This document shows, in pieces, positions 25,701 through 49,700 of a stretch of DNA of 64,000 nt. Source of the stretch: Ostrea edulis (Eukaryota); the NCBI RefSeq assembly GCF_947568905.1, contig NC_079169.1, forward strand, positions 87,792,001 through 87,856,000. The letters run 5' to 3'. Each line of letters begins with the position of its first letter. The stretch's first letter is position 1. A model generated the notes under the pieces. The model saw only the letters and a program-made list of their open reading frames with translations, made no database searches and had not been told where the DNA came from. The position numbers and the translations under genes were made by a program.

Positions 25701-28700
25701 TGTGGTAGATTTTCGTGAATGTCAATAGCTTTCCCATTATGTGACGACAAAGCTCTGAAGCCTATGATATATGTTAGCAATATAATGCGTATCCATCACC
25801 GCTCTCCATATTACATCAGTCTCATCACCCAAGTTGTCCCATAAATGTTACCGATCTGTGGAAAAAGGATCAGAACCAACAAAAAAACTGTTGCATGATA
25901 CGGTTTGATAGAGCTAGAAATCTTCGATTATTATCGCTTACATTGCCAATCCTGAAGTTTATGTGTCTGCAGAATTTCCAAAACAATGATATGGTATTCA
26001 CATGACCGTCACAAAAACTATTGAGTAATATCAGAATGCAGCTGACATTTGTTCTAGTTGCATTATTTTCTAAAGTGCAGGTCATTTCTACTGTGTAGGA
26101 TGTACTGCAACATTTAGTGTGTGTGTGTATGATAAAGCATCCTAAATACAATAATCTCACAGGAATCCTAAATATCATGGAGATGATCTTAAAAGACTTT
26201 TAGCCTGTTACCTAGTCCTTTTGTGTATTGATTGATTTATTTATTAAACTAATCCTAAAAATTTCCATTGATGATGATTTTCCTTGTCGACACTGCACGG
26301 AGTATTGAAGATTACATGATAGTATATTAATTCTTGATCAATTTCAGATCCCTAAGTAACTGTCGATTGATTTTTTTCTATGATATGCATAAAATTTGTA
26401 AGTGCTGCTGAACTAATAACTCCACTTAGGCTACTGTGTCATGAGAGAAGGGGAACAACTCTTGTGGTCTTGTCTAGAATGATGGCTGATCAGTACATTT
26501 AAAACTTGCGTTTATTGTAGGATATAGACAACCTAATGAATGAGGGGAACAAATCTAGGACAGTAGCAGCCACCAACATGAACAACGAGAGCAGCAGATC
26601 ACATGCAGTGTTCAATATCGTACTGACCCAAACATTGACTGATTTATCTACAGGGGTAAGTCCTGACCCAGACCCTGACCGGTCACCAACACTGATCAAA
26701 ACACTGACTGATTTATCTATCGGGATAAATTGATAACACGGTACTAATCAAAACACTCACCGTTTTATCTATCGGGATAGATTAATAGCACAGTTCTGGC
26801 CTGGAGGTTATAAAACTTTTAGCGTACTCATACTCAAACTCAGCCATGATGTTTGTTTTGAGTACAACTCTGAGCAAGCTTTGAAACATACTAAAAATAT
26901 CTTGAGCATGTACTCCATTTGAGTGTGAGAATGATTTTATAAAAGTTTTATAGCTTCACTTTTGAGTATGAGTATGATTTAGAGCACAGAGTTTGAGTAT
27001 GAAAATGTGCTCAAAAAAGTTTTATAACCTCCAGGCCTGAACAAAAACACTGTCTGATTTATTGAGAATGTTGGAGACCCATAGTAATGGCTGCCCAGTT
27101 TTTAACCCATCAATGTTTTAAAGGGACTGGTTCACGATTTTTGATAAAAATATTTTTCATTTTTGATGTTAAACATTAAAAATATAACTCATTTAATATT
27201 GACAGCCAAAATTTTGACCTTCTGAATGCAAGAATAAAAGCTATATTTCACGCTTAAATCTGTGTTATGTGAACAAAAACTCGAGTCTTTTTATGTAAAC
27301 AAACAAGTGAAATATTGATTTTGTAATATAATTCATCTTAATTTTGCATAATCACAAATTTTAACTTTTAGATGACACATTTTACCCCCAAAATGCTTGA
27401 AATGTGAAAGATATATAATAAACTTAGATCGATATCCATTTCTTTTGAAATTTCGTAAACAATAACATACCGCAATCTTTGTTTACAAAACAGATAATAA
27501 ACTCTCTAAAATGAGCTTCTGTGATGATGTATAACCTTAATTTTCATTTGAAATCTTTGAAACACATTAGACAGTAGATTTTGATCATTAAAAGTGAAAA
27601 AGAAAATTTTGGGTAAAATCGTGAATCAGTCCCTTTAACATGTATCATCATATCTCCAATATTTTTTAATAAACCAACCTATTGATTATGTAAGTGGAAA
27701 ATGTTTAGAGGAAGACCACTTTTGATTTTAAGGTTGAAGTTCAGGTTATGACGAGATTACATCTGTATATATATGAAGCTTTACTTTGTGAATATTTCAA
27801 GATTCAGACTTCATAGTCAGTAGACATGTCAGAAGACACGTATTCATTTTGAGATCACTAGACCAGAAGTTCCTAGTTTCTAGAAGCTCCGATTGAAAGA
27901 TATATTAGTATTCATGCTGCATACATTTGAACCTTTTCCAGTTTTTACATTTGCCCTTCATCAAAGGTTTGTCTGATTTTTCTGCCTTGTTACCGTGAAT
28001 CTTGTCTGGGTCAGATCTTCGTTGTCTTAACACAGGCTTATCATATCTGACACGTCAAGTATATCGCCATCATTCAAAGTGTCACATACCGTCTGACCTA
28101 TATATGACCTTTACCTTTCTTCTCAAGGTCACAATAATACTTATATTGACATATGTTTATAGCGAGGTCATGGATGACCTTTGTCAGTTTTCTAATATTC
28201 GGAGACCGTTCTTGCTAACAACTGTTTTATTTTTTAACACACCCCTATCGGTTTCTCTTAATAGTATACTCATGGCTTAAGATATCACATGACTTTATTA
28301 GAAATGTAAACAGAACACTTTTATTTAATCTTCATGTTTTCCAATGCATTTTGTGCAGTAAACCCAATAAAACGTGCCTGCTTTTCCAAATTTATGAAGC
28401 ACCACGAGCTATTAGAAGGGACCCTTTGTTTATCCACGAGTTTCACTATCACTTGTATTACACTAGAGGGCCTATTCTACTGAAACTCTTCCATCGTGTG
28501 TAAATATTGTGTGTGTACTGATGTTCTGCATTTCTTTACATTATGTCATATACATTATGTACATGTATTTTGTATTTGAAAAAAGTGGAGCATTAGATAG
28601 ATTACTAAAAGTATAACTGGTCTGAAGTGGATGAGCTTTCTTTGGTCACTCTAACAAGCTTAAACTTTTTTGACCAATTTTAGCAAAATGATTGTGGACA

Positions 28701-31700: not shown

Positions 31701-34700
31701 AATTGAAACAAAAAAGAAATCAATTTTACAGTTGTACGTATGTGTTTGATTTAAAATATCATTAGTAAAATATGAACAAGGAACCATGAAAATGATTGTT
31801 TTTAAGTGTGCACTAGTAATTGTTTTTGCTAATTATACTATGGCATTTAAAATCATATCAGTTGCATTTATCAGCTTTACCATCGTCATACAAATGTCGT
31901 AAGCATGCGTCAGTGCTGTTAGTATGGACGAAGCCATGAAATTTGTCAGTGTCGCCCGTAGAGCAACACAAAAAAATAATAAATCATCCTCTCGTGTAAT
32001 ATTTCATTGTTTTTGTAATTCAGCCCCAAAATCTTTCATTAACTAATGATGGAGACATATGGAATTTCATGATTTAGATTTTGGTAATCAATATCAGAAA
32101 GTTATCTTGTGTGAAGTTGTCCCATTTTAAAGTGTAGAAATTCAATACAAACTCAATTAAAAATAGCGTTAGCAGCCAAGTGGGAGGCAGATTCTCTCTG
32201 AAGGAATTCTCCTATAGATTAGTTGTGTGGATATATAAAGGCATTTGTATTCCAACTAAAACTCTAAATATATACTTTGTCATGAAAAGATATGTTTGCA
32301 ATGGCTTTCAGTAATTTGAATAGATTCCGGAAATTCGTCTCTCTTAAGCTTGGAGAATTGCACGGATTTACTGGGCTAGATCAACAGAGTTAATGCAAAG
32401 TATTGATGACACTACCCAGGGTGCACTTGTCTCGAGATGAAAAATCCGGCCGTAAATGCAAGTTATTGCATTAATAACCAATCAAGAGGGTTCAATGTAA
32501 ATCGCATGTTTCAGATTGAATTGAAATTCATGCTCAATGAGAATGTTTGAATATCCGCAATTTATTTTCAGACTTTCATGGTAATGGTGACAGTAATTGA
32601 CAATTTATTGATTAACAATGGCGTAATACATTACTCAGCATGATGAACAGATTATTAAAAAATGGCTCATTCTATGGTCTTTATTTCATAAAGTCATGAT
32701 ACAGAATTCATGCTGTTAGAATTTCAACCATTTTTCTACTTTTTTTTGTACTGATGGTTTAAATGCGTACGGTTTATATGACCCCAATCTTGCTCCATTG
32801 TTTGGGATTGGGGTCTTGAAGGTTGAAAAAGCAACAGCAATTTTTTATCTAAAGTGATGGAAGAAATGTATGTCACTGACAAAAGCATCATGTAATATGT
32901 TAAATGACCCTCACACACAGCAAGGAACACATGCTAAATATAAAAGTGCTATTTCTTACAGTTAGAAAAAGTTCTGACCCCCACGCACAGCAATGTCCTA
33001 CAGTTAGAAAGAGTTCTGACCCCCACGCACAGCAATGTCCTACAGTAGAAAGAGTTCTGACCCCCACGCACAGCAATGTCCTACAGTAGAAAGAGTTCTG
33101 ACCCCCCATGCACAGCAATGTCCTACAGTAGAAAGAGTTCTGACCCCCACGCACAGCCATGTCCTACAGTTCGAAAAAGTTCTGACCCCCACGCACAGCA
33201 ATGTCCTACAGTTCGAAAAAGTTCTGACCCCCACGCACAGCAAGGTCCTACAGTTCGAAAAAGTTCTGATCCCCCCCCCCCTCCCCACACACACACAGCA
33301 AGGTCCTACAGTTCGAAAAAGTTCTGATCCCCCCCCCCCACACACACACACACACACACAGCAAGGTCCTACATTTAGAAAAAGTTCTAGTTGTCATAGG
33401 ATGAAAGGATGATGGACAGAGTAATCTTTACGTGTGCTTATGCTGTGTAAGTGACACAAAGTTGGGAATAAAATTTTATCGTTAAATGATTTATATTCAG
33501 ACTGTAGCTGTAATGGTTAGAATATTATAAGATTATTTATGTGAAATGACCTTAGATTAAGATTTTGTTTACCAAAATTGTTTGCAATTTATTGAGAACA
33601 ACACACCTCCATTTTCATCATTAGAAAAGGGGTCTGTGAAAATCTAGGGCCCTGTAAGATAATATTGAAATCAACCATTACAAAAAAGGAATTATTATTG
33701 ATATCGGTAGGTAAATAAATGTAGTAAGATTTTCAGCAGCATCAATCACTCAAACATTTATATTCTTAAACATGATATAATTTCTGCATACTGAAATGCC
33801 ATATGAGTTCCCTTCTCTTTTCTGTATCTAACTATCAAGCAGATAAATTATTTACATATTATTTACAAGCTTTTTTTAGATTGAAAACAGTTTTCAAAAA
33901 TCATTTTTTCTCATAGAAGTCACAATTGTCTGTCACAAAAACACTGTAATCACTTGTAACTTTTCTGTTGAAAAATGGCTTGGCCTGATCAAATTCCTTG
34001 ATAGGCATGAAAAAGTCCTCCTCATTGGAACACAAAATCTTGTCAGTTATTTTGTTCATCAGATTCCGTTTGATTCCAGCAAAAATCAAAAATCCCAAAC
34101 AGCTAACAATTAGCAGAGCAAGAACTGGGACCACAATTGCCACAATGCTGGTGTCGTTGGAGTCAGAGTGGGTTTTCTGAGCAGCGCCCTGATTGGTGGA
34201 ATTTCTGGGGTTGCTCACACTGGTGGAGTGAAGTGGCTCATTTGAAGATGCTGCTGTGGAATGTGCTTCCGAGTTAGTGCTAAGTTGTTGAGTGGTCCCT
34301 AGGACATTAGAACTCTGCACCTTAGTGGTGACGTGAGATCTTTCTGAAGACTGCACTGTTTTAGTTGTTGATGTTGGGGTTGTTCTTTCCTGTGTTTGTT
34401 TATTTGTTTTTTCTGTTGGCGTGGTGACTGTTGTCGTCACGGTTTCTGTTGATTGCATGATATTTTCTGTTGACGTTTGATTGATCACATGGTGGGGATT
34501 GCTGTTGTCGGTGGATGGAGTGACTGTTAAATGACTGGTAGTTGTTCTCACGTGTGTTGTTGTTTCACTGAAACTTGGACTAAAGGAAGTGTTTGTGTTT
34601 GATGTGAAAGGTGATGTGGATGCATACTCTGATGGCAAAATGGTAGGAGATGGGTTGTCAGTTCTTGTTTCAACTGATGTTGATCTAGGAGGTAACTTAT

Positions 34701-37700
34701 TTGCAGTGGTGATGGATCCCATGGTTCCACCTGCTGTTGTGTATTCATTCGTTGGTAGGGTACTTTCATTTTCATTAGAAGATGAGGTGGATGTTCCTGT
34801 AGGATATGGATTTAGGGTTGAGGTTTGATCAGAGCCAACAGTTGTTGGAACATCCGTCGATGCACCTGATTCCACTGTCTGAGTTTCACTGTGAGTGTAC
34901 AGTGCTGCAAGAGTCGTGAGGTGGGAAGTTTGAGAGGTGGATTCTGATGGAGTATTGCCATGATCTGCTACTGTTGTGCTTTCATAGCTAGATTCTGTAC
35001 TTGGACTCAATGAATAGTGAGTTTCTGAAGTTTGAGTTGTGGGAGTTGGCGTCTGAACTGTCGATGTAAAGTCCAAACTCGTAATTGTTGCTGTTTGTCC
35101 TGTTGCGTTTTTCTCAGTGGTATTTTCGTATTGCACCTGTGTTGTTGTTGATTTGTTTTCCTGTGTAGTTGTTTCAAAGTCAGTTGTCGCCTGTTCTGTG
35201 TAAGTTGGGCGTGTAGTGAACTCAGACTTTTCTCCAGTGAGTGTATTAACGTCATTTGTTGTTTCAGTTTGCCCAGAGAAAGGAAATGGGGAGATAACCT
35301 CTGTATATGCTAAGGTAGTAGACTCCTGGTGTGCCACAGTTTCACTCGATGTGGTCTGTGTAGTTGTTGTTTCGGGTCGTGTTATACTCTCGGCTGTCGT
35401 CTCGCGTACTGTTTCCGAGACATCTGCTGTTTCCATTGATGACTGTACTAGGGGAGTGCTTGTTGTAGACTCTGTGTTTGTCAGATTCTCGTTTATTGTT
35501 GTTGGATTTGGGGTTGCAGTTGTCTCATTGTGTTTAAGATTTGGGGTTGCAGTTGTCTCATTGCGTTTAAGATTTGGGTTGTAGGTGGTTTCTGTTTGTT
35601 CAGTGCTTTGGTTTGTTGTCATTTCAGATTTTTCAGTATTTTGGTTTATCGTTGTTTCTGGTTGTGTTGTTGCAGATTCTGTTTGTCTCTCACTTCCTGT
35701 TGCCGTCTGCCACTGGTTGTATGTTGTGTCCTGTGATTTGTTACCTTGATTGGAAGATGAGGATGTGGTGCTGTCTGGAATGTTGCTTTGTTCTCTTATT
35801 TCTGTTAGAAAAACTTCAGTTGTTGACTCTGGATAATTTTCACTGCTGCCCAAGTCCGATTCAGTTGTTGATGGAGCAGGCACTGGAATAGAGGTGGTAA
35901 CATATTGGTTTGTTGCCAAATCCTGCTTTGTTGTCTCAAAAGCTGTGGAATTCTGGTTTTTCTCACTTGTGAAGTCTTGGTTTGCAGCCTCTGAAGTTTT
36001 GAAATTCTGATTTGTCGTCTCTGGTTTTGTGAAAGGTTGGTTTGTTGCATGAGAAGTTGTGGAATCACTGTGTGTTGTAGACTCTGTTGTGAAGTCTGTA
36101 TAGGATTTAGAAGATGATGAAAAATCTGTGAAATAAAGTTCAGAAGTTTTTTCTGTAGTTTCACTTGATGGCATTGTTTCAGAAGTACCAGGGATTTCTG
36201 AAGTCTCTCCTGATCTGGTGGGATAACCCGTGGTTGAAGTGTGCCCATTGGTTGGAGATAATGCTTCTGTAGTGGACATTTCTGATGATGAAGTGTCAGT
36301 TTCGGTTCTTTCTGGGGTAGGTTTATTTGTGTTTGGTATCTCGCTTGTCTGCTCCATGGATGCTAGGTTTCCAGTGGTGGTGGATTGTGTCTGTGGGTAT
36401 GTAACCCCATTTTTCTGTGTTGATGATGGTTGGAATGATGTGGAATGTTCCATGGTTTGTTGTGTGTTGGGAGTCGTAGAAGATTCACCCGTTTGGTTTC
36501 CTTGACTGACTGAGAATTTGGAAGTGGTATTTAGAAGTGAGGTGGTATTTGTAGTAGCTTCTGTTGTAGTGGTTAATGTCACGGAAGAAAAATCGACTTC
36601 TTGCGAGGTGTTCTGATTTACAGAATTTGTAGGTACAACGTTCAGTGAAGTAGTCAGTATTGTTGAAGTTTCAGTGGAGGTAGATGTTTTATCGGAAGCT
36701 GAAGTAATGATGGAAAAGTTCATAGTAGAACTGGATGTGGCTGAAGTTGTTACTGTGCTCTCAGTGAATGGGACAAATTTTGAAGTCGGGGTCAGTTTGG
36801 TGTTTGTTTGTGCTGTGGAACTTACAGGTTTTGTTTTAGGTGCGGTCATAGAAGTCACAGTGATTGTAGTGGTGGTAGAATGCAAACAGTCTCTTGTTAG
36901 ATCTCTGCTGATTGAAAATAGCTTTCTGCCTGCATATTTAGGAGGAGTCTTGCAAACAGGCTCATGTCTGGAGTAATGAAATCGGAGATACTGTGTGAGC
37001 CATTTTAGTTCACAGTTACAGTTCCACGGATTATCGTAGAGCAGTACTTCTCGGGTTCCCATCAGCCTGAGGTACAGCTCCATAGATTGAGGAAGTGACC
37101 GGAGTCCATTATTATGCAGGTCAAGAGTTGTAATGAAAGAATTAAAGAAAATATTGGGGTTTATCTCTTTGATTCCATTGCCACTAAGATCTAAAGTGTC
37201 TACCGTTATGTTACCAAGGTAACTAAGTTTTTCGATATGATTTCCACTAATGTTAAATATAAGATCTACCTTGGATAGCTTTTCCAATGCCTTGGTGGGA
37301 ATTTCGCTGAAGTTATTATTGGATAAGTTTATAACAGTCACACTCGTCCCAGCGAAATCACTCTCGGAAAGGGTCGTTAAATCATTTCCTTCCAAGCTGA
37401 GAAAGTACAGGTGTGGAAGGCCGGTAAAAAGCTGAGGAGGCACTGAGAGCCATTGATTGTAGCCCAGTTTTAATCTTTCTATTGTTATAAGGTCTCTCAT
37501 GACATCTTGGTTCAGGGAATCAATTTTATTGTGTGATAAATCTAAGTCTATCAGTTTAGGCAGGTCATCAAACAGTTTGGAACTAATACTGTCAAGATGA
37601 TTGAATGACAGGTTGAGATTGGTGAGACTTTTCAGTTCGTTAAATGTATCGTCTGGGATGTCCGAGATGTTATTTTTAGACAGGATCAGCACACGTAGGT

Positions 37701-40700
37701 CAGTTGGACCGGAAAAGGATTCTGCCGATATAACTGATATTTCATTCTCAGCCAGATCAAGGATCTCCAAGTGTGTGTTGTTTATAAAAGGGGATCCCCA
37801 AATGAATTGCAACCCGTAATTTTGAATTTTTAGAAATGTTAAATCCTCAATTCCAAGAAATAGGAAATCTTTGAGAATGCCGCTGGGGATCTTGTCAGGT
37901 GTCCCATCATAAATGTGCACGTGTTTCACCGGTCCAGCAAGTTCACTAATACTTACGTCTTCACAGACGGCCCCCAAGATGTCCCATGACGTGTCATTTT
38001 TTTCGCACAGAATACATTTCCTTGGACAGAGGGTGTTGTCTCTTTTAAGTGTACCCTCTATAAGAACCACTAGTAATGCTACATAAAATACAATCACTTC
38101 TTTCCAGTGAAGCATATCGGATGTTCTTCACAATTATTTAGCAAAGCACAACAAAATTTTGTAGGTCTTTTTGCATTTTCACATGTAGCATGCATCTGTT
38201 ATTATTACGCAAGAATGGGTGTTCTCCTTACAAGTAGCAAGTGCAAAGGTAATCTGGCAAAAGATCACAGTTCAGGCAACCAAAATGCCATTTTACAACC
38301 TCACATGACGTGTTTAGTAAATCAAACTGGATATAAATGAGCCACGTTTTCGTATGTTAATCATCAGGGGAGATAACTGTCTTTTACAGCTGTCATGAAA
38401 AGCATGAATAATCAACCGACAAGAATTGGTTCCTGTTTGTTCAGTATATCTAGGGTTTTAGTGGACCCCGTTTATTTACCCCCACTCTTTGTTAGTTTGT
38501 TAATCTGTTAAGTTTGGTCTGATAACTTTAATACAAATTAACGGCCATTTGTACGGAAGGTTTTAACCTGGATTTATTGGCATTTTTGAACTCTATCATT
38601 CATCTGAAATCATGGCAGAAATTTAGTGAATTTGAGTGTGATGTTTTCATGACATCTATTATAGTAAAATCATTAGAGAATTTTTATGTTTATTGAGGAT
38701 TTTCATTGTCAGATATACATGTACTCATAGTATTCAGAAATTTCAAAAGATTTTAATTAACTTAAGGTTGAATGAAAAACTATAAGAGATAATTTTACAA
38801 CAATACTACAATGTATTTTTAAAAAGTTACTAAAAGACTTCACCTCTGATATAATACAAAGTGGGGAAATTTGCATGTATTTGTAATTTTTAAAAAATAC
38901 AAATTCTAGAAACATTTTGAGATAAATTTAGAGCACCACAAGTGTGAATTAAGGTAAAGATAAGCTCAAAGAAAACCGACGCATCTCTATAGGGTAGTCT
39001 TAGCCATTCTGTATTGTTCAGTGGATAAAAAAACTATATAATTTATCCAACTTTTCTTTGAAAATAAATAGGAACAGAATTTAATTTCTTTAGAAAATAT
39101 CCCCTTTTGCTCAAATAATCTTTTTTTATTCAAATTTTTACCTTGTCTATATCGTCGAGTTGTTCTTATATATACTCAACAAAGTATTAATTTATTTCAA
39201 AATAATTATATTACCCAGAAAGCAATTAAATTTTGATTTCAGCTGTAGTGCATGATGTCTACATAACTCGGTAATTCTTCAATTCAAATAAAATAAAACA
39301 AAAAATCAAATAAACACTGAAAACATATCATTAATAAGGTTATACTCAAAGCTTATCAAGTGTAAAACAGTATTAGGTGTAAAACAGTAAAAAAAAAACT
39401 TTCTTGAAATGAAGACTTATTACCCTAGCTGAGTTAGTGCCTCACTCTGCAAGAACATTTAAAAATTAATGTACTTATTTACTAACTAACATGCACTACA
39501 GCTGAAATCAAAATTTAATTGCTTTCTGGGTAATATAATTATTCTGAAAAAAATCAATACCTTGTTACTCTCTTTATTGCTTAAGACATGTGTCTTATCA
39601 CATCAGTTACAATATATATACATAAATACGTAAAAATGGCATTGTATGGGGGTGTACAAATTCAAACAACAGAGAGTTGTTAACTTTGCACATTTTCAGC
39701 TCTTCACATTTTCAGATTCTTCACATTTTCAGCATCATCACATTTTTACTCTTCACATTTTCAGCTCTTCACATTTTCAGATTCTTCACATTTTCAGCTC
39801 TTCACATTTTCATCTTCTTTAGAATCACTGGGATAGTTTCATCCCAACTCAGTACAAAGCATCTTAATAGATTCAAGTTTGCATGTTTACATCATTACCC
39901 TTTGTCTAAGACCAGCTCACAAATGGGTTAAATGAATTCAAATTTTATTTAAATAATGGCCTCCGTGCCACTCTGAAGAAATTACATTAGAATATGAAGA
40001 AGAAAAATCTTCAGAAAAGAATACGTAAGAAGAAAAATCTTCCAAAAAGAATACTTAAGAATAATATAGGAATTTTTTTGATCAAGAATAAAGAAAACAT
40101 TGACCTAGAATATATAAGAAAATTTTACAGTTAAAGTATATAAATTTAGAATATATGGGGAGGAGGGGGGGGGGGACTTTGCAAAAATCAAAACGGTATA
40201 ATCTTGAATATATAAGATATATCTCAACAAGAATCAAAAAGGATATAATCAAGAAAGATCTTCTTAAGAATAAAAAAAGAATAGACTATACAGGAAAAAT
40301 CTTATCAAATATAAAAAAGAATATTTCTGTGAGATTCATTTTGAATGATTCTTTGTGCTGTGTTAAATCACTTTTGTTCAAGCCCTGTTCCGCGCGGCCC
40401 TGGAGTCAGTGCAAGGACATGATAGAGGATTTTTAAAAGTTGTAGAGTCAAATTTCTGTAATGTTTTTAATTAAGAAATGTGGAGTAGAAGGCTAATAAA
40501 ATGTTCAGGCATCTTCATACAATATAGATTCAAGTTCTACATACATTCATGTATTGAGTTGTCTTTATGCCCCCACTGAGGTTTTTTATTCCCCCACCAT
40601 GAAATGTCTTGGGCAGTTTGTGTTGCCCTCTTTCACCATTCCATCATAATTCAGTTTCTTTTCAATCATTATTTCTGCTACAGATGTGCATATTTAACTG

Positions 40701-43700
40701 AAATTTGGTATACAGATACATCGTGAAAATATCTAGACTAATTTTTATTTGGTTCTTGTTGAATAATTTTTAACAGAGTTATGCCCCTTGTACTTAGAAA
40801 ATTTTCAACAGTCGCAAATGGACATTTTGAACAGAAATTTGAGTTATGGCCTTTGGGCTGGGACATTCGCATTGCTCCTACATATCTATCTAGTACATGG
40901 GCCTCTTCTTTATTGATTTAAATAATGGCTTAAAGATTAAGTTTGAAACAGTTTCAAATGCATGTGACATTGTGTACTCCAAAATCACCACATACCCTGG
41001 TAACCACTGTGATGGAGTTTTGTATTATCTATTGGAATTTACTACAAGGAATGTCATTCATAATAAAAGTTGTATTTCTCGGAGGTTCTGGTTTCAAAGT
41101 ATAAGCTTATCAATACAAAATAAATTGTATTGTTGTCTATATATTGTATATATATCAAAATTTGTTCAAATCAATACAAAATAAAATCTGTGTTTGTAAG
41201 CAATTTATTTTCCCAGCAATTGAGATAATACAATAGAATGAGAGTAAAGTGACTACAATATCTCAGAAATCCTAGCTTATTTTCAGATTTCAGTTGTGGT
41301 AACATCATACAAGGACATTAATTAGTTAAAATCAGTAATTAAGTGCATCAGTTTATAAGAATTCTGTAAAATGATACGTTACTGTAACCCAGGCTCCGTG
41401 TTTTTCGACAGCGATTGTTCAGTGCGATATCCATTAGCAAAGACACTGTTAGAATCTATATCATTACAAGTGTTTGTCTGATCCATCTCCATTTGTAGTT
41501 TGACATTTTGCACCACTGGATTTTGAATTTCAATCTGTTTGTTGCTGTAAGTTGTCTCGCTGCTTTCAGCATTAAGATTGCTTGGTTTACGTTGATAAAA
41601 TGTCTCCATCTCGAGTGAAAAACTCTGTAAATCACACAAAGTCACTGTGGTGTGTTCAACTGAAGAGGGAGGGATGGAGTAACTTCTGCCGAGTTTTCTA
41701 GGCGTGTCCAAAATCCTGGAAACTCTGTCCAATGAAGTATCAGCAGTTTTTGGTCGCCGACCTTTTGGATCGGCGTCTTCTCTTACCCCGAGGTTGCTTC
41801 TGAGGGGCTTTACCTTCATTATGGTAACCCTCGGCGCTCTCACCTTGGACTTGGGGAGCAATTTTTGTAGTCGTTTATACCATTCAGTTATTTTCTTATT
41901 GAGTATAATGTAAAATATCACATGAAGCAATACTAGAACAACTAACAGGGTTGCCATGGTGATAGAAATGGTCACTTCCTGTGTTGTTACATTTGTATCG
42001 ATCACAGAATCACTGACCAGACTGGTGGACGACATTCTAGCGCAGATAGGGAAGCACAATCCCTGTACACAAAACTCCGACCTCACACAGCTCTTTCTCT
42101 TGTATGACAGAAAACAACAATAATCCCCTGCAAATAATGGTTGGTTCCAAATTTGTCAAAACATTCAGTTTTTTTCACAGTATTTTTTTTTTTACCAAAA
42201 ATAGCTTGTTTCATGTCATTCTACAGTCTGTATTTATTTCCATTCCCAGAGGAAATGTGATAAAATTATGAATCAAAGCCGGATTATATTTATGTCCACA
42301 CTTGGATGCAGTTGATAAGCCTATGTTTGCCTCAGAGACTCACTGTAAACTGTAATACATACTCTATCAGTCTAATTTCTCTTTAAAAAAAAAAACAACC
42401 AACAACACATCATTGCACACACAGAGACAGAAATAATTGTTTTGAAGTTGCCAACAATTCTTTTTATTGGCCTATATTTCTTGAGTACCTATTAAACTTT
42501 AAGCGTGAAATAGCTGATAGGTTTAGATTCCCATTGGTCAGTCACAATTCACTCGCAGGAATCACCATACCACTTCACAGACTCCATAATTCAGAAGTAA
42601 GGACTTCAGTCACGTCTGCAGTGCAATGAACTTTATTCTAACTTCTCGGTTAACAAATAAAGTGTTTATATTTGTATTTCTGCATGAAACTGAAAACCAC
42701 AGCTATGGGGGAAAATAAAAGTTTCATATCTTGATTTTAAAAAAAAAATCAATTGATGAATTCTGGAGATATGAGTGGGCCTGGGTATTGAAAGGCTTAG
42801 GTTTGTTACATCCCAGATCACTAGGCCATTGGATAACTCTCTCCTCGGCATTGATCCGGGATCAGTAATTGACAGTAGTCTCCATGGGTCTGCAGGTTGG
42901 CTTCACAAATCTTCAGCCACTTCTGAAGTGTTACAATATCAACACTCATTATTTTTATCTATTAATCATTTCTAGTTTGTTGATGTGTATTTGCTCTGCT
43001 CTTTCTAGTGTTTTCTTTGTTTCAGTGTAACATCTTTGTCAGACAGGCACTTTGACACTTTTTAAGAGTGTCAAGACAGTTGGTATTTGTGATAGAAAAT
43101 TAACAATCACAAGATTAAGATGCATGTTTGAAGAAATGAAAAATCTGCAATTATAGGAAAAGATTAGAGATCACTAAACCCATTTTGCATATAGTGAGAC
43201 ATTTATTTGTACAAAGAAAACAGCATTATATGGTGTTCAATCAATTTACAGGTATTGTAATGTTTGTCTCAGACATTTAAGGATTTCCGACATCCGTTTT
43301 AGAAGAAAACAACAAAATTATTTTGATAAGCCACACAAACAGATTTCTGATGAAAGCCACTCAGTGAATGACGGCCGTTGTGGTTTGATTTTTAGGTCGG
43401 ATGGTTTGCAGTTCAGTGCCAGCCTTTCCCCGACTTGCTGGTCGAGTGAGGAAGCTTTTCACTTTGGCTTTTGCACCAAAGCTGATGCCAGAGGATGGCC
43501 CAGCAGACTCACCAAAGTCGCAGCTTATCATGGTCTCCATGGCATCGACATCACCTTTACTGAATCCACTCTGCTTAGCCGAGAGTCTTCGCTTCTTCTC
43601 TCTGTGCTTTCTTCGAACTCGGCATATGATACATAGAATTGGTCCTAAAATGATGGTGAATCCTATGATGATTCCCACAATGATACCAAAGGTGGAGGAG

Positions 43701-46700
43701 GGAGATAACGAGGCCTCGGTAGGAATTGGGGCCTTCTGAACACTGTCCGGTGGCGTACTCATTTCAGGCCATCTCTCCACAACCGCCATGGTAACCCCCA
43801 TATGATTTGGATTTAGGGGCACGGGAGTTGTCCTATTGATTGGAACAGTGATGACTTGTTCATGGTTTATCATGTGTACCTGGTCTCCTTTCTGGACTTG
43901 GATCTCAGTGTCTACATTCAGTGTGATGACTTTCCCTGTGGTGGTAGGCATCTCTCCTAACATTGGAGCCAGGTCTGGTATTGTTTGACTGTTGTTGGAT
44001 TTAGCAGATACCACATTCCCAGGGTGCTGAGCTATCCCTATAGCTTGCTGCATGATATCTTGTGTTTTAAAGACGGATGCTGGAGTTACTGGCCCAGATG
44101 GAGAGTTGGAGGTTATTGGAGGTGTCTGTGGCCACCCCATGTTGACCGTGTTTTGATTAGGCTGTGCTCTTGGGTTTTGATTGGGTTGCACTGTTTGATT
44201 TTGAATCATTGTAGCCATGTTTCTTGGAATGTATTTTGAGGAAAACCTAAAGCTAGCTCCAGTCCTTGGAATGCTGATTCTCTTTACATCCTCAGCTACC
44301 ACTTCAGCAGGTTTGGGTGTCGGTCCTTTCTTCTGTGCTTTAACAGTCTCTAGATGTTTTGTCCAGGGTGGTGGAGGAACGTTTCCTTCATATCTGTACT
44401 GCATTTTGTACCTTGTTTCCCGGTTGTTGATGGCGTCCATTATGGAGGCCACTGATAAGTCCTTGTTGTCTCTCTGTCTGTACACCTCGTTCAGGACAGC
44501 TTTAACCACATTGATGTTAGTTTTGGTTCTGCCTTCTTCTTTCTCTTTCTCCACTTCCTTTTCCACGTCTCCTTGTTTCCCTCCGTCTGGGTCTGGTTTC
44601 ATGGTACCATGTGGATTCCAGTTCTGTCTCCTTGAGGAAGGTGTCCATTGATCGTATCTCTGAGGTGGTCGACCTTGGTTTGTGTTAGCCTGTGGTTGTG
44701 GAGGCCATCCCCTTGTTTCACTCTGTATTCGCTGAATATTTTTAACACCCTGACTCATGATCTCACTTTTCTCTGGTTGTCTTGTCTGATTTAAAGTTAG
44801 ACCAGTCAATCTGTCTCGAGGCATAGGTGCCCAGCCTGATGGTGGAGCCGGGTTGTATGACGGCTGATTTTTCTGAGCATTTTTCTCATTATTCTTTCTG
44901 TTTTCCAGGTGATCCGGAGTATCCGGTTTGTAGGGCCTAGTCCATGGATTAAATCCAAAACCATTGAAACCATAACTGTAGGGATTATAAAGATAGTTCC
45001 GTGGATTGGTCATGATCTGGCTTTGGTTTTGTCCAGTCATACTTGTAGAGTTAGTAGTTTCGTTTCCATTTCCCCATCCTATTCTTCCTTGGTGTTGGAA
45101 CTCCGCTAGCTTGGGTCTCAGGGTATTTGATTGCGCTGAATTTCTTCTAGTGAATGCCATGGTAATGTTGCCTGTGCTGTTTGCACTCTTTGGATCGGTT
45201 CCAGTCCAGACCCCTAATCGGGTGTGAGGTCTCTGAGGAAATCCGGTCTGAGGTCCAGATCCAGGTATCCTAGGGGCCATCCCAGGTGCAGGTACAGGAT
45301 GTGGAAAAGCCATAGGTGGAATAATGTCCAGTCCCCCAAATTTGCTAGCATACTGATTCATCTCGTGCATGGCTTGCATAGCCTGCATTCGTTGATACAT
45401 AGTGTCTAATCCATCAGGGAGGTCAGGGTCTAGCAGGGGAAGTCCTGGGCCAGGGAAGGGGGGTGCTTGATTCCAGGGCCCATACGGTGGTCCATTGCTA
45501 GGATATGGTGGTGGCCCATTGTTCCAGTTTCCATTCGGAGGCCCATTATTTTGTGGGCCATTCTTCCAATTATTGTTTGGTGGACCACTATTCCGATTAC
45601 CATTAGGGGGTCCACTGTTCCAATTTCCATTTTGGGGCGGACCATTCCGGTTTCCGTTAGGGGGACCATTATTCCAGTTACCGCTGGGTGGTCCAGCATT
45701 CCAATTACCACTCGGTGGTCCAGCATTCCAATTGCCTTTAGGTCCATTATTGATGTTTGTGGGACCACCACTCCATTTGTTATTGGATGGTCTGCCTCGA
45801 GAATTTCCACTGCTCCGCATTGAGGTTCTACCTTGCGAGTTTCCACTCGTCCATGATGAGGGCCCACCTTCCCAATTTTTTCTTGGAGGTCCATTGTTCC
45901 AGTTTGAAGACCCAGAGTTCACCTTGGGCTGTAAATTGCTGTTATAGTTATTCTGGACATTTTTGTTTTGCGAGTTGGATGAATTTTTTTGAGTTGTCTG
46001 GTTGGTTGGAAACCCAGGGTTTGAATTTTGTCCTGTTTAGAAAAAAAAAAAGAAATTAAATCAGTCTTATTCATAATGTGGTGGTGTTTCATAACCATAC
46101 GAAATTACAAGTGCAAATTAGTTGATATATTTGAAACTGTAAATGTGTAAAGGAGATGTAACAAATCAAAGAAAATTATATTGAATTAGAAAGTATGCAT
46201 GATGATTTTTTGAAATTTGAAAACTTTCAAATATACGTTATTTAATGAAAGGTAAAAGTTTAAGGAGGTACTCTACATTGTCATAATGGCTGGCTTCCTT
46301 TTAAAATATGGATGAAATTATAAATATCAGCAATATTTGTCTATCCATTTAAAAAATTATCGCCTAACTGAATAGCTCAGTAGGTTAGCATGTTGACTGC
46401 TGAACTGTAGATCGTGGGTTCGAGTCCAGCAGGGTTTTTTAATTTTTTTCAGATCGCTTTAAGTGAATTTGAAAGTTTTAAATTTCAAAATATTGTTGTA
46501 CATATCATCCACTTTTCATCCATATCAAATTTCTCTGGTGTAGCATACCTCCTTAAATTGTGTAGAGAAGGAAAAAAAAAACCTGTGTGACTCGCGGATC
46601 AAACTCACAATCTACAGATCGACAGCATTTTGCTAAAACCACTGAGCTAAACAGCGTAAGTAACAAAATTTAAAGAGGAAGAATGTATCACTGATACAAA

Positions 46701-49700
46701 TGTACATGTTTATTCATTTGTGTTTCGAAAGAAAGTTAGCAATTATGGCAATGTGGTATTCCTCCGTAGATAAATTCCATAGCATTGTATGAAATGATCA
46801 TGGTTTCCAGTACAATACAAGATGGACCAAATTAACAAGAGTACCCCTTACAGAAACTAAATACTTAGTGGTCAATAATATATTTAACAAAAACTGTTAT
46901 CAGATACATTTGAGTTTAAGATAAATTTGGCTTCCAAGGTTAATGAAGTAAATCTGCACAATGGTTACTTAACGGACTTAACACAAAGGCTAGAAGATGG
47001 AAAACTTAACGGAATTAACACAAAGGATAGAAGGTGGAAAACTTAACGGAATTAATACACAGGAGAGAAGGTGTAAAACTTAACAGAATTAACACAAAGG
47101 CTAGAAGGTGTAAAACTTAACAAAGGAGAGCAGGTGTCAAACTTAACAGACTTAACACAAAGGAGAGAAGGTGTCAAACTTAACAGAATTAACACAAAGG
47201 AGAGAAGGTGTCAAACTTACCTTGGTTCCTTGTCTGTGCAGTGATTTCTTCCCACAAAAGTATCCCCAAAAGAAAAACTCCGAAAAAGAATTTGTCCATT
47301 TTGTGGCTTTATGTATGAGTTTTATAGTACTTCTTTAACTTATTATGGAAAAAGGTGCATCTCTGGATATAGAATAGAGATGAATGATGTTTAATGATGC
47401 AAGTCATCGTGAAATTGACACAGGGTGATTAAGAAGTTTGAAGTCTTGATTAATGGGTAATTGTTCACTGAAGACATTTGTCAAGTAAACTATAGGTGTA
47501 ATCTCAATGGGTCTGCAGGCAGTTCTGTGTTAGGTACAGCCCCTAGACCTACCAGAAAGCAGGGGTACATATAGACCACATGTGTTGTTTGTGAAATATC
47601 ACTTGCACATTTTTTTTTGGAATTATACAAATTGTTTGTAAATATTTTTTTTAAAAATTAGAGAAATACATGTATGTTGGTCTTGTGGAAATAGTTTGCA
47701 ATGAAGTAAATCAGCTGAATTGCTACCATGATAAATAAATGATTTATGAAATTAAGAATTTGTTTTTGAGGGACATTAAAAGATGTGCAATGAGCTGTTG
47801 AATTAGCGCTAATGGATGAAGCCAGCAATACTAATATAAGTATTTTCATATTTATTGAAGTTTAAATACTGGAAATTCTAAAACCAAGATTATTCTACAA
47901 TATGGACTCCGTTATATGAGGGAGATAGTATTTTCCCAAGATAAGTGCATAAAATCCTTGTATGAAATGTTCATCAATATTCAAGAAAATTTGATTTGTA
48001 ATTATGAAAAAAAAATTACTGATGAGCTTTGATGAAATGAACTCTGATAAGCTTTAGTTTAATTACTAGGTAACGGCTTGATTTAGCAAGGAACGTTATA
48101 AAATTACACGCCTGGTCTATGATAACACCATGTAAGCGGTATGATTAATTTTCCTTCACCTGTAGCTTGTAAACAAGATCAAACACATATTGTGCCAATC
48201 TTCCTGCCTCCAGGATAATGATGGACATTATAATGTTAGTTCTGCAAGTAATCTCAGCAATTAATAACAAGAGATTTCTTAGATATCGACTCTTGTCAAA
48301 TAAATGTGTTCCACTTCAAAGGCAAGGGAGCTAATCCATGTTGAAATGACAATTTTAGCGACAGCTCTGTTGTTTATCTGTCGAGGACAAACATCATTAA
48401 ACAGGGGTCATTGAACTTCAAGGTGGTGAATTTGTAGGTATTTTTTCTTAGGTGTTTGTATTCTGGGTTGGGTTTTTTTTTTGGTTGGGTTTTTTTGGGG
48501 GGGGGGGGGTTTTCTTTCTTTTATTGACATCCCAATATAGTTTAAATACCTTTATTTCAGTGTATATCTCAGAAATAAAAATTTGCTAAATTTATATTCA
48601 ATTTCAAGAATTAAACAAGCAGATAAGATAATTAACATTTTCAATCTGTTAATTAATCTTGCTGAAATTTTCATTTTGAAAGAGCAATAGAATTGTGAAA
48701 ATTGAACTTTTTTGACATTGAAAATAACAAGACAGTTTTTACAATATATTTTGTGTTTATGGCAATATATTTAAAAGTGTTTACTGATGGCCTTGTGTTC
48801 TTATTTGACAGGTGAGTGGTGAGAAAGTGAGCAAAGTGAGTCTGGTGGACTTGGCAGGCAGTGAGCGCGCTCAGAAAACTGGAGCCGTCGGAGATCGCCT
48901 GAGAGAAGGCAGTAACATTAACAAGTGAGTGAGATCAAAGGGAAATAACTCTGAAGTCTGCGTCGTTCAGCTAAAAATCATTCCTTCTTGTTCAAAGAGA
49001 AGTAACTCTAACAGGCTTTAAGAGAAAATTAAATATTTCAGTAACATTTAGGTAATATTTTTCAAATGCTAATTTATAAGAGCTGAAATTGAACAAGAAC
49101 TTCAAACGCATTACAGGAAAAAATTCTTGATTTTCAGGTCCCTGACAACATTGGGCCTGGTCATATCCGCTTTAGCTGATCAATCAGCAGCAAGCAAGAA
49201 GAAGGACAAGTTTGTTCCATATCGAGACTCCGTGTTAACATGGTTACTCAAGGTTTGAACCCAAACTCTACACCTCAACTTTCAGTCATTTTAAACTCCT
49301 CCATAAAATGGAAAGGAGACTTCAATTGATGAAATAAAGAAATTTTCAAAAAAAAAAATTTCAAACATTGTCATTAACTACAGACACGAACAGTTTAGAT
49401 TTCCTTATGTGACTTTTCAGAGGACCAGGCTAGAAAGGTCACTTAAGAGTCTCTTTATACAGACTTTGTCTTGCATGACCTTTCATGGGAACCAGCAAAA
49501 AATGGGTCACAAAATATAGAGATTAGAATGAAGCCATTAACAGATTATACAGTGACCAATGTATTGATGAATGATTTTCATGCAGATCCTATCTACATTT
49601 AGTACATATTCGGCCTATATTTTAGAAAAAGTATTGTTAATTTTTACTTCCATGTATAAATATAATTTTTCCACCGTGGATCTCTAAAATAGAAACACGT

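What the first reader, a model, noticed from the sequence alone, without database searches (positions are those of the whole stretch)
43361..47299. Hidden signal-peptide exon completes a 916-aa membrane protein with a Cys-free, GPPxGNWN-repeat ectodomain
Seen: the track ORF starts at a GTG, but the frame is open back to a strong acceptor at 46033, and a 79-nt phase-1 exon (47299-47221) supplies an ATG and signal peptide in the correct phase. The ectodomain of about 800 aa has no cysteine and is a series of compositional blocks: N/Q-rich, about 8 GPP(S/N)GNWN-type repeats (about 45510-45745), Pro-rich, Met-rich ([14 protein letters not shown]), Tyr/Phe/Gly-rich ([19 protein letters not shown]), charged, then P/T/Q-rich. 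Known: blockwise low-complexity design is typical of molluscan shell-matrix and adhesive proteins, and N/G/aromatic repeats typify self-assembling prion-like domains. Inference: a membrane-tethered, possibly shed, disordered matrix or adhesion protein with no family I can name.
Basis: partly seen in the sequence, partly recalled or inferred. Interest (0 to 1): 0.72.

Follow-up and report, generated by a model that had tools for sequence, protein, structure and literature searches.

The report
Oyster disordered single-pass membrane protein gene
This is a real two-exon flat-oyster gene, already in RefSeq as an uncharacterised 916-residue protein, for a cell-surface protein with a long floppy cysteine-free outer part and a membrane anchor and tail shared across molluscs; its function is unknown.

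Summary
A 79-nt exon (47299-47221, minus strand) gives an ATG and signal peptide. It has a GTAAGT donor, and the acceptor at 46033 sits in the right phase. Translated apart, the two exons equal RefSeq XP_055998506.1 (Ostrea edulis LOC130047448, 916 aa) residue for residue. The exon is therefore not hidden: the model is already public.

Crassostrea and Saccostrea orthologues begin with the same signal-peptide exon. A spliced cDNA contig from a Crassostrea-like oyster joins at the same nucleotides.

All orthologues lack cysteine in the ectodomain. AlphaFold2 predicts it as almost wholly disordered (mean pLDDT 36.5). Yet it is under purifying selection: dN/dS is 0.12 overall, 0.15 in the repeats and 0.03 in the transmembrane segment plus tail.

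No Pfam or PDB family matches, but the protein is not an orphan. Full-length relatives occur in pearl oyster, scallop and mussel. The transmembrane-plus-tail module also occurs in gastropods and a unionid. All are uncharacterised.

I found no support for the shell-matrix or prion-like readings. Most likely it is a syndecan- or sialomucin-like surface glycoprotein whose conserved tail binds cytoplasmic partners.

An earlier scan note covers the same stretch.

The parts
47221..47299 (-). Exon 1 coding part: the ATG plus 26 codons and 1 base. Encodes the signal peptide (MDK, a hydrophobic [13 protein letters not shown] core, and a likely cleavage after ITA at residue 21).
   Evidence: Identical to residues 1-26 of XP_055998506.1. 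Orthologue N-termini align with it.
47215..47220 (-). Splice donor GTAAGT of the phase-1 intron.
46033..47220 (-). Intron of 1188 nt. It holds a 37-nt tandem repeat of about 7 copies (46967-47219) that starts at the donor, and tRNA-like SINE fragments.
   Evidence: O. edulis Logan contigs L001 and L006 carry its 3' part.
46033..46052 (-). Polypyrimidine tract and acceptor (T-run followed by CTAAACAG).
   Evidence: An acceptor sits at the same place in the C. gigas-like contig L003. The spliced joint caag|gacaaaat is seen in cDNA contig L002.
43361..46032 (-). Exon 2: 2 bases, 889 codons and the TGA stop. Encodes residues 27(part)-916.
45752..46030 (-). N/Q/S-rich leader of the ectodomain (residues 28-120), with a conserved N-glycosylation sequon at N37.
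45467..45751 (-). GPPxGNWN(x) nonapeptide repeat block (residues 121-215): N+Q 35-37%, Pro 22-28%, one Trp per unit.
   Evidence: (27-nt period). Repeat number differs between species.
45392..45430 (-). [13 protein letters not shown] island (residues 228-240), followed by the Met/Gln-rich helix 234-253. It is the most widely conserved ectodomain motif, shared with pearl oyster, scallop and mussel.
44348..44515 (-). Conserved helical and [15 protein letters not shown] segment (residues 533-588) after an acidic stretch. It is the best-predicted part of the ectodomain (pLDDT 58-61).
43622..43690 (-). Transmembrane helix [23 protein letters not shown] (residues 808-830), with two conserved Cys at its cytoplasmic end (C827 invariant and C830 in 15 of 20 family sequences).
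   Evidence: hydropathy 2.85; pLDDT 72-75.
43364..43621 (-). Cytoplasmic tail (residues 831-916): polybasic [16 protein letters not shown], then the AMETMI-x-[13 protein letters not shown] and TELQT-x-(K/R)PK motifs, ending in IH.
   Evidence: dN/dS is 0.033.
43202..43207 (-). AATAAA poly(A) signal about 155 nt after the stop.
   Evidence: The orthologous cDNA contig L002 ends at an AATAAA about 145 nt after its stop.

Best explanation
This is the single-copy Ostrea edulis gene LOC130047448.

Shown:
- It has two coding exons on the minus strand.
- It encodes a 916-residue type I membrane protein: a cleavable signal peptide, an ectodomain of about 786 residues, one transmembrane helix and an 86-residue tail.
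- The ectodomain has no cysteine, is predicted almost entirely disordered, carries seven positionally conserved N-glycosylation sequons and holds short conserved islands.
- The whole protein is under purifying selection, strongest in the transmembrane segment and tail.
- The transmembrane-plus-tail module defines an unnamed family found only in molluscs among the named hits. Ectodomains in this family diverge fast.

Inferred:
- It works like syndecan, neurexin, glycophorin-C or sialomucin-type surface proteins.
- An extended, glycosylated, flexible ectodomain would present short linear motifs and Trp/Asn/Pro repeats to extracellular partners or to the pericellular matrix.
- The membrane-edge cysteines (C827 conserved in every family sequence, C830 in most) are likely palmitoylated.
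- The polybasic stretch and the conserved tail motifs would recruit cytoplasmic adaptors or the cortical cytoskeleton.
- It is not a shell-matrix or prion-like protein.
For: - Gene model: the exons equal XP_055998506.1 exactly.
- Orthologue support: the same signal-peptide exon is in the RefSeq models of C. gigas, C. angulata, C. virginica and S. cucullata.
- Splice evidence: cDNA contig L002 joins at the same nucleotides, and genomic contig L003 has the acceptor at the same place.
- Selection: dN/dS for the Crassostrea pair (dS 0.40) is 0.117 overall, 0.15 in the repeats, 0.077 in the mid ectodomain and 0.033 in the transmembrane segment plus tail. Within O. edulis there are 15 synonymous and 13 non-synonymous differences.
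- Cysteines: the ectodomain is cysteine-free in all nine orthologues.
- Disorder: AlphaFold2 gives mean pLDDT 36.5, with only helix 804-847 above 70. The ESM Atlas model has pLDDT 0.41.
- Glycosylation: 7 of 11 ectodomain sequons are conserved in position.
- Family range: the profile search found full-length kin in Pinctada, Argopecten and Mytilus, and the transmembrane-plus-tail module in Gigantopelta, Plakobranchus, Elysia and Sinanodonta. hhalign on transmembrane segment plus tail gives E 1e-20 and 1.6e-14.
- Copy number: single copy in its own genome.
- Synteny: the downstream small membrane-protein gene is kept in C. gigas.
- Nearest language-model neighbours are the tails of neurexin/syndecan, glycophorin C, crumbs, TMEM154 and opalin. 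These are leads only.
- Protein trace: one peptide of the C. gigas orthologue K1PNV2 was found in a digestive-gland pull-down (PMC10058639).
Against: - No read evidence for the O. edulis junction was obtained.
- No experimental datum bears on function, location, glycosylation or palmitoylation.
- The Syndecan Pfam model does not match any of 20 tails.
- There is no GTY/GSY 4.1-binding motif and no conserved PDZ-type C-terminus across the family.
- The disorder prediction rests on a shallow 13-sequence alignment.
- The proteomic trace is a single peptide with 4% coverage.
Confidence: 0.6

Rival explanations
1. Self-assembling pericellular coat. The N/G/P/W repeats and the aromatic block ([19 protein letters not shown]) drive multivalent self-association, by phase separation or prion-like assembly, of membrane-tethered chains. 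This would form a gel-like layer or adhesive contacts.
For: The repeat block is 35-37% N+Q, has regularly spaced Trp and is followed by a conserved Tyr/Phe/Gly block. It is under purifying selection despite predicted disorder. Repeat number varies between species, as in other multivalent domains.
Against: Proline at 22-28% in the repeats disfavours amyloid-type assembly. The GPPNGNWN unit is confined to oysters: the Pinctada-like relative has a different unit, and scallop and mussel relatives have none. No assembly predictor or assay was run.
Confidence: 0.12
2. Processed or shed precursor. The ectodomain is cleaved at conserved dibasic sites (FTRRNS, TPSSRR) or near the membrane, releasing soluble fragments that act as matrix components or ligands.
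For: The dibasic RR sites at residues 321-322 and 494-495 are conserved among most oysters. Many single-pass disordered surface proteins are shed (general knowledge).
Against: There is no furin-type RxxR or RxKR motif and no SEA or other autoproteolytic domain. The strongest constraint lies on the transmembrane segment and tail, which argues that the tethered form matters. There are no data on fragments.
Confidence: 0.1
3. Shell-matrix or biomineralisation protein, as the first reader suggested by analogy with blockwise low-complexity molluscan matrix proteins.
For: Blockwise composition and N/G-rich repeats. Restricted to molluscs.
Against: It is anchored by a conserved transmembrane helix with a strongly constrained cytoplasmic tail. 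No acidic Asp-rich or known matrix domain was found. No paper in the library lists any orthologue in a shell proteome by accession. The only protein trace is from digestive gland. The tail module also occurs in the sacoglossans Elysia and Plakobranchus, which I recall, from my own knowledge and untested here, to lack an adult shell.
Confidence: 0.07
4. Gamete-recognition or other fast-evolving recognition protein.
For: A repeat-bearing, lineage-specific surface protein with variable repeat number.
Against: dN/dS of 0.12-0.15, with no region near or above 1, is unlike gamete-recognition genes. The peptide trace is from digestive gland.
Confidence: 0.03

Closest known systems
RefSeq LOC130047448 (XP_055998506.1, Ostrea edulis) and its oyster orthologues: C. 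gigas LOC105330942 / K1PNV2, C. angulata LOC128162834, C. virginica LOC111125944, and Saccostrea models named 'mef2A-like' and 'DDB_G0286901'
   Same: Identical sequence for the O. edulis entry. The others share 58-67% identity over the full length, the same signal-peptide exon, the same motif order and the same downstream neighbour gene.
   Different: Nothing differs for the O. edulis entry. The names given to orthologues ('transcription factor mef2A-like', 'Trithorax group protein osa') rest on low-complexity similarity and are not supported by any domain match.
Syndecans and the neurexin / glycophorin C / crumbs type of single-pass proteins (Pfam PF01034 Syndecan tail)
   Same: Type I topology, a mostly disordered glycosylated ectodomain that diverges fast, and a short, highly conserved transmembrane-plus-tail module. 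These are the nearest named neighbours by language-model features (scores 0.77-0.85, leads only).
   Different: No PF01034 match in any of 20 family tails. No C1/C2 blocks or EFYA-type C-terminus. No acidic Ser-Gly glycosaminoglycan attachment clusters seen in the sequence.
Transmembrane mucins and sialomucins (MUC1, MUC15, CD34/podocalyxin, podoplanin, endomucin)
   Same: A long extended ectodomain on a single transmembrane helix. Cysteines at the cytoplasmic edge of the helix are followed by a basic cluster (CIICRVRRK here). I recall MUC1 having a similar CQC-RRK arrangement; that is from memory and untested. Weak sub-threshold Podoplanin and TMEM154 hits occur in family members.
   Different: The repeats are N/G/P/W-rich, with only 3-7% Ser+Thr, so they are not a PTS mucin domain. 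No SEA domain was found. All Pfam hits are below their cut-offs.
Molluscan shell-matrix low-complexity proteins (nacrein Gly-x-Asn repeats, shematrins, N16/pearlin)
   Same: Blockwise composition and N/G-rich short tandem repeats. This is a resemblance from general knowledge, not a test.
   Different: This protein is membrane-anchored, has a conserved cytoplasmic tail and shows no matrix domain. No orthologue accession appears in the main text of any paper in the library besides the norovirus pull-down study; supplementary tables, where shell proteomes usually list accessions, were not searched.

Membership tests
Oyster LOC130047448 orthologue group (unnamed) | Full-length collinear similarity, including the signal-peptide exon and the intron position | tested here: met
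   Exact identity to XP_055998506.1. Identity of 58-67% over the full length to Crassostrea and Saccostrea models. The junction is at the same nucleotides in L002 and L003.
Oyster LOC130047448 orthologue group (unnamed) | Conserved gene neighbourhood | tested here: met
   The small membrane-protein gene just downstream is 59% identical between O. edulis and the C. gigas-like contig L003.
Mollusc transmembrane-plus-tail module family (unnamed; defined here) | AFGI-x-GPI-x-C-x(2)-C-(R/K) helix, basic EKKRK stretch, (I/A)ME(A/T)M-x(3)-(L/F)G motif and ELQ-x-L-K motif | tested here: met
   Profile search E 1e-6 to 1e-73. 20-sequence alignment. hhalign E 1e-20 and 1.6e-14.
Syndecan (PF01034) | Match to the Syndecan transmembrane/cytoplasmic profile (C1-V-C2, EFYA end) | tested here: not met
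   No PF01034 hit at E up to 1 in the protein or in 20 family tails. The C-terminus is ...AVIH.
Adeno_E3_CR2 (PF02439) | Score at or above the gathering cut-off of 36 bits | tested here: not met
   26.7-30.8 bits, confined to the transmembrane helix plus basic stretch.
Transmembrane mucins | Ser/Thr/Pro-rich tandem repeats, usually with a SEA domain | tested here: not met
   The repeat block has 3-7% Ser+Thr. No SEA or mucin Pfam match.
Prion-like (Q/N-rich) domains | Q/N-rich, with low proline and low charge, scoring in PLAAC-type models | tested here: inconclusive
   N+Q is 35-37% and charge is low, but proline is 22-28% in the same windows. PLAAC is not available here.
Shell-matrix proteins | Secreted by the mantle and recovered from shell extracts | not testable with these tools
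   No shell-proteome data can be searched by accession. The library's main texts list no orthologue in a shell proteome. A membrane anchor is present.

The most novel reading that the evidence does not exclude
The transmembrane-plus-tail module marks a previously undescribed, mollusc-wide family of single-pass receptors. It would be analogous to syndecans, with a fixed cytoplasmic signalling or anchoring tail and a lineage-specific disordered ectodomain. In oysters, the Trp/Asn/Pro nonapeptide repeats would then be a new kind of extracellular, selection-maintained binding or self-association module, for example for polysaccharide, mucus or microbial ligands in the digestive epithelium.
Probability: 0.25. 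Interest if true: 0.5.

Novelty: new member of a known kind. Interest (0 to 1): 0.27.

Why it matters
For annotation, the finding adds nothing new: RefSeq already has this exact model. What this work adds is a definition of the family:
- It is a single-copy gene under purifying selection.
- It is conserved from oysters to mussels and scallops.
- Its transmembrane-plus-tail module reaches gastropods and unionids.
- No Pfam family or publication covers it.
- Database names such as 'mef2A-like' and 'Trithorax group protein osa' are misleading.

It is also a clean example of a long, cysteine-free, predicted-disordered ectodomain kept under constraint. It is a possible apical surface component of oyster digestive epithelium, a tissue of interest for pathogen and virus uptake. 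None of this bears on a long-standing open question.

Tried and rejected
- O. edulis Logan contigs L001 and L006, fetched in hope of a spliced transcript, both carry the 3' part of the intron. They say nothing about splicing.
- Family and structure searches: Pfam on the protein, on eight relatives and on 20 tails gave only sub-threshold transmembrane-type hits. The PDB profile search with the tail gave no hit.
- Fold search was not run, because the AlphaFold2 model (pLDDT 36.5) is too poor to give meaningful matches. ESM Atlas structure neighbours all have TM below 0.5 and are meaningless here.
- Paralogue searches in the same genome with the tail, the tail profile and the repeat block found only the gene itself. 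One weak hit proved to be a DNA tandem repeat.
- hhalign of the ectodomain against the scallop/mussel and '486-aa' groups aligned only the transmembrane segment and tail.
- Literature searches by accession, motif and run id found one paper, a single-peptide listing.
- The signal-peptide-like ORF at 47658-47849 was considered as an alternative first exon. I saw no usable donor, and no orthologue supports it.
- The spliced model was searched exon by exon, by reference. Full-length work used the database protein P0008.


Full report
**1. The observation**

On the minus strand an ATG at 47299 opens a 79-nt exon that encodes [26 protein letters not shown]. The exon ends at AAG|GTAAGT (47221/47220). 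At 46033/46032 a run of T followed by CTAAACAG|GA gives a strong acceptor.

The extra base of exon 1 plus the first two bases of exon 2 make GGA (Gly). The frame then runs open for 889 codons to a TGA at 43363-43361. The mechanical ORF list starts at the GTG at 45922 only because that is the first start codon after an intronic stop.

GC rises from about 0.30-0.35 in the flanks to 0.44-0.50 across 43500-46000.

Cysteine occurs only at residues 827, 830 and 864 of the full protein. These lie in the transmembrane helix and the tail, so the ectodomain of about 786 residues has none.

Tandem Repeats Finder gives a 27-nt period with 6.6 copies at 45564-45742. The unit is therefore a nonapeptide, GPPxGNWN plus one residue. 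Six units match strictly and about five more are degenerate.

**2. The model is already public**

The word search found a 98% identical Logan protein. Its 90% cluster holds XP_055998506.1, 'uncharacterized protein LOC130047448 [Ostrea edulis]', which is 916 aa.

Translated apart, the window's two exons equal residues 1-26 and 28-916 of that entry, with Gly27 as the split codon. So the window is from Ostrea edulis, and the 'hidden' exon is hidden only from an ORF track.

Full-length analyses used the database protein P0008.

**3. Evidence for the splice**

Two O. edulis Logan contigs (L001, L006) contain the 3' part of the intron and are uninformative.

Indirect evidence is good:
- RefSeq models of C. 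gigas, C. angulata, C. virginica and Saccostrea cucullata all begin with an alignable signal peptide followed by ...Q-G-QN....
- A 3061-nt Logan contig from a Crassostrea-like oyster (L002) carries a 958-codon ORF with no room for an intron. It reads ...aatcaag|gacaaaat..., the same joint as caag|gacaaaat in the window.
- A C. gigas-like genomic contig (L003) has ttgacag|gacaaaat at that place.
- An AATAAA lies about 155 nt after the stop (43207-43202). It matches the end of the L002 cDNA.

**4. It is a functional gene**

Nei-Gojobori estimates on exon 2 for the Crassostrea pair L002/L003 (dS 0.40, unsaturated) give these dN/dS values:

| Region | dN/dS |
|---|---|
| Overall | 0.117 |
| N/Q and repeat part | 0.15 |
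| Mid ectodomain | 0.077 |
| Membrane-proximal ectodomain | 0.19 |
| Transmembrane segment plus tail | 0.033 |

Two O. edulis alleles differ by 15 synonymous and 13 non-synonymous changes and one in-frame 2-residue indel. No orthologue has a frame disruption.

The cysteine-free ectodomain is shared by all nine orthologues, including a 30%-identical Pinctada-like protein. Seven of eleven ectodomain N-x-S/T sequons keep their position in at least 7 of 8 sequences.

**5. Architecture**

- The signal peptide has a hydrophobic core and a small-residue ITA|Q site. This is read from the sequence; no SignalP was run.
- One hydrophobic segment, [23 protein letters not shown] (Kyte-Doolittle mean 2.85), is followed by [12 protein letters not shown]. 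That gives a type I topology by the positive-inside rule.
- AlphaFold2 with a 13-sequence alignment gives mean pLDDT 36.5 and pTM 0.20. 809 of 916 residues score below 50.
- Only helix 804-847 exceeds 70. Weak helices appear at 234-253 and 533-563 (pLDDT 55-61).
- The ESM Atlas model of the same sequence has pLDDT 0.41.

The 'disordered' reading is supported as a prediction, with the caveat of a shallow alignment.

**6. Relatives**

Pfam gives only Adeno_E3_CR2 at 26.7-30.8 bits (cut-off 36), on the helix plus basic stretch. PDB gives nothing.

I ran an exhaustive profile search with residues 222-916 of seven orthologues, leaving out the low-complexity N-terminus. It returned 37 proteins at E of 0.001 or better.
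- Full-length or long relatives carry the DPDLPDGLD motif. They are Pinctada imbricata KAK3088714, Argopecten irradians XP_069106194, Mytilus coruscus CAC5410129 and two unnamed ones.
- The remaining hits match only the transmembrane helix and tail. They include Gigantopelta aegis, Plakobranchus ocellatus, Elysia crispata and Sinanodonta woodiana.
- Every named hit is a mollusc, and every one is 'uncharacterized' or 'hypothetical'.

A 20-sequence alignment of the module shows these shared features:
- AFGI...GP(I/L)xC with the first cysteine invariant, followed two residues on by a second cysteine in most members and then a basic residue;
- a basic EKKRK stretch;
- (I/A)ME(A/T)M...(L/F)G;
- ELQxLK;
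- often ...SP..(I/V)H at the end.

Profile-profile comparison confirms homology of this module, at E 1e-20 with scallop and mussel and E 1.6e-14 with a 486-aa group. It aligns nothing else.

The GPPNGNWN unit is confined to oysters. The Pinctada-like protein uses a GGPPQGWNGPNQ-type unit, the scallop a GTPPGPRGWD-type unit, and mussels none.

In O. edulis the gene is single-copy. Neither the tail, the tail profile nor the repeat block finds a second locus.

**7. Context**

Kinesin motor-domain exons lie on the plus strand at window 7904-7999, 18641-18844 and 26515-26643, and again at 48821-48928, 49115-49252 and 50311-50427. KIF1B and DUF3694 exons follow 29-33 kb beyond the window.

This gene and two other minus-strand membrane-protein genes (33901-38115 and 41379-42086) therefore sit antisense inside a roughly 22-kb intron of a kinesin-3 gene. 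An earlier scan note (s1-306961) said this too, and my test agrees. I did not verify that the kinesin is KIF13 specifically.

The small downstream gene is 59% identical to the gene just downstream in the C. gigas-like contig, so local synteny is kept.

**8. What it most likely does**

Shown: a conserved, single-copy, type I surface protein with a constrained but predicted-disordered, cysteine-free, probably N-glycosylated ectodomain, and a very strongly constrained transmembrane-plus-tail module.

Inferred:
- The design parallels syndecans, neurexin/glycophorin-C/crumbs-type proteins and sialomucins. In those, a conserved tail couples to adaptors and the cortical cytoskeleton while a flexible ectodomain carries the binding or barrier function.
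- The cysteines at the cytoplasmic edge of the helix are typical palmitoylation sites.
- The polybasic stretch fits binding to acidic lipids or FERM-type adaptors.

These are analogies, not membership:
- The Syndecan profile does not match.
- No GTY/GSY or EFYA-type motifs are present.
- The repeats are too poor in Ser/Thr to be a mucin domain.
- Language-model neighbours of the tail are exactly this class of tails, but at lead-only scores of 0.77-0.85.

The only protein-level trace concerns K1PNV2, a 662-residue fragment model of the C. gigas orthologue misnamed 'Trithorax group protein osa'. It is listed with one specific peptide (4% coverage), from digestive gland only, among 55 candidates captured by norovirus GI.1 P protein displayed on bacteria (PMC10058639). 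That is weak evidence that the protein exists in digestive tissue. It is no evidence of a role.

**9. Rivals**

- **Self-assembling or prion-like coat.** This is possible but weakened by 22-28% proline in the repeats and by the repeats being confined to oysters.
- **Shedding or processing.** Conserved dibasic sites make this conceivable, but no convertase-type motif or SEA domain is present, and selection is strongest on the tethered part.
- **Shell matrix.** The reading has no support. The protein has an anchor and a constrained tail, no shell-proteome mention turned up, and the module is present in sacoglossan sea slugs.
- **Gamete recognition.** This is contradicted by low dN/dS.

**10. Verdict**

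The gene model is already in RefSeq.

What is new here is modest. An unnamed mollusc family is defined by its transmembrane-plus-tail module. Purifying selection acts on a cysteine-free disordered ectodomain. Some database names are shown to be misleading.

I file it as a new member of a known kind (single-pass disordered surface glycoproteins). Interest is low to moderate.

Noticed in passing
window 26515-26643 and 48821-48928 (+), with further exons at 7904-7999, 18641-18844, 49115-49252 and 50311-50427: Plus-strand kinesin motor-domain exons flank the locus, and KIF1B and DUF3694 exons lie 29-33 kb past the window end. The three minus-strand membrane-protein genes are therefore nested antisense in a roughly 22-kb intron of a kinesin-3 gene.
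   Followed up: partly
window 33901-38115 (-): A single 1404-codon ORF encodes a signal peptide, leucine-rich repeats, a very long Ser/Thr-rich mucin-like stretch, a transmembrane helix and a short tail. It is a separate neighbouring surface-protein gene. By eye its tail does not resemble the module described here.
   Followed up: no
window 41379-42086 (-): A small single-pass membrane protein gene. It is 59% identical to the gene that lies just downstream of the orthologue in the C. gigas-like contig L003 (4246-4890), so local synteny is conserved between Ostrea and Crassostrea.
   Followed up: partly
window 46967-47219: A 37-nt tandem repeat of about 7 copies starts directly at the exon-1 donor. 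Each unit contains gttaagtttgaca, a near-copy of the real donor context ggtaagtttgaca.
   Followed up: no
window about 46585-46660 and 46365-46440: Two tRNA-like stretches in opposite orientation inside the intron, probably heads of tRNA-derived SINEs. ARAGORN calls no tRNA there. O. edulis Logan contigs L001 and L006 both break just 3' of them.
   Followed up: partly
window 47658-47849 (-): A 63-codon ORF beginning [15 protein letters not shown] looks like a signal peptide, about 360 nt upstream of the gene's ATG. I saw no usable splice donor, and no orthologue supports it, so it is probably chance in AT-rich DNA.
   Followed up: partly
window 14186-16641 (both strands): A long minisatellite gives overlapping 650-770-codon ORFs made of YSYDMPL-type units in several frames. 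These are repeat artefacts rather than genes.
   Followed up: no
L001 versus window exon 2: The two O. edulis alleles differ by 13 amino-acid changes and an in-frame Pro-Leu insertion after residue 482 of the full protein.
   Followed up: yes
P0002, P0003, P0018 (database names): Orthologues are named 'transcription factor mef2A-like', 'putative uncharacterized protein DDB_G0286901' and 'Trithorax group protein osa'. No domain match supports any of these names. They look like transfers driven by low-complexity similarity.
   Followed up: partly
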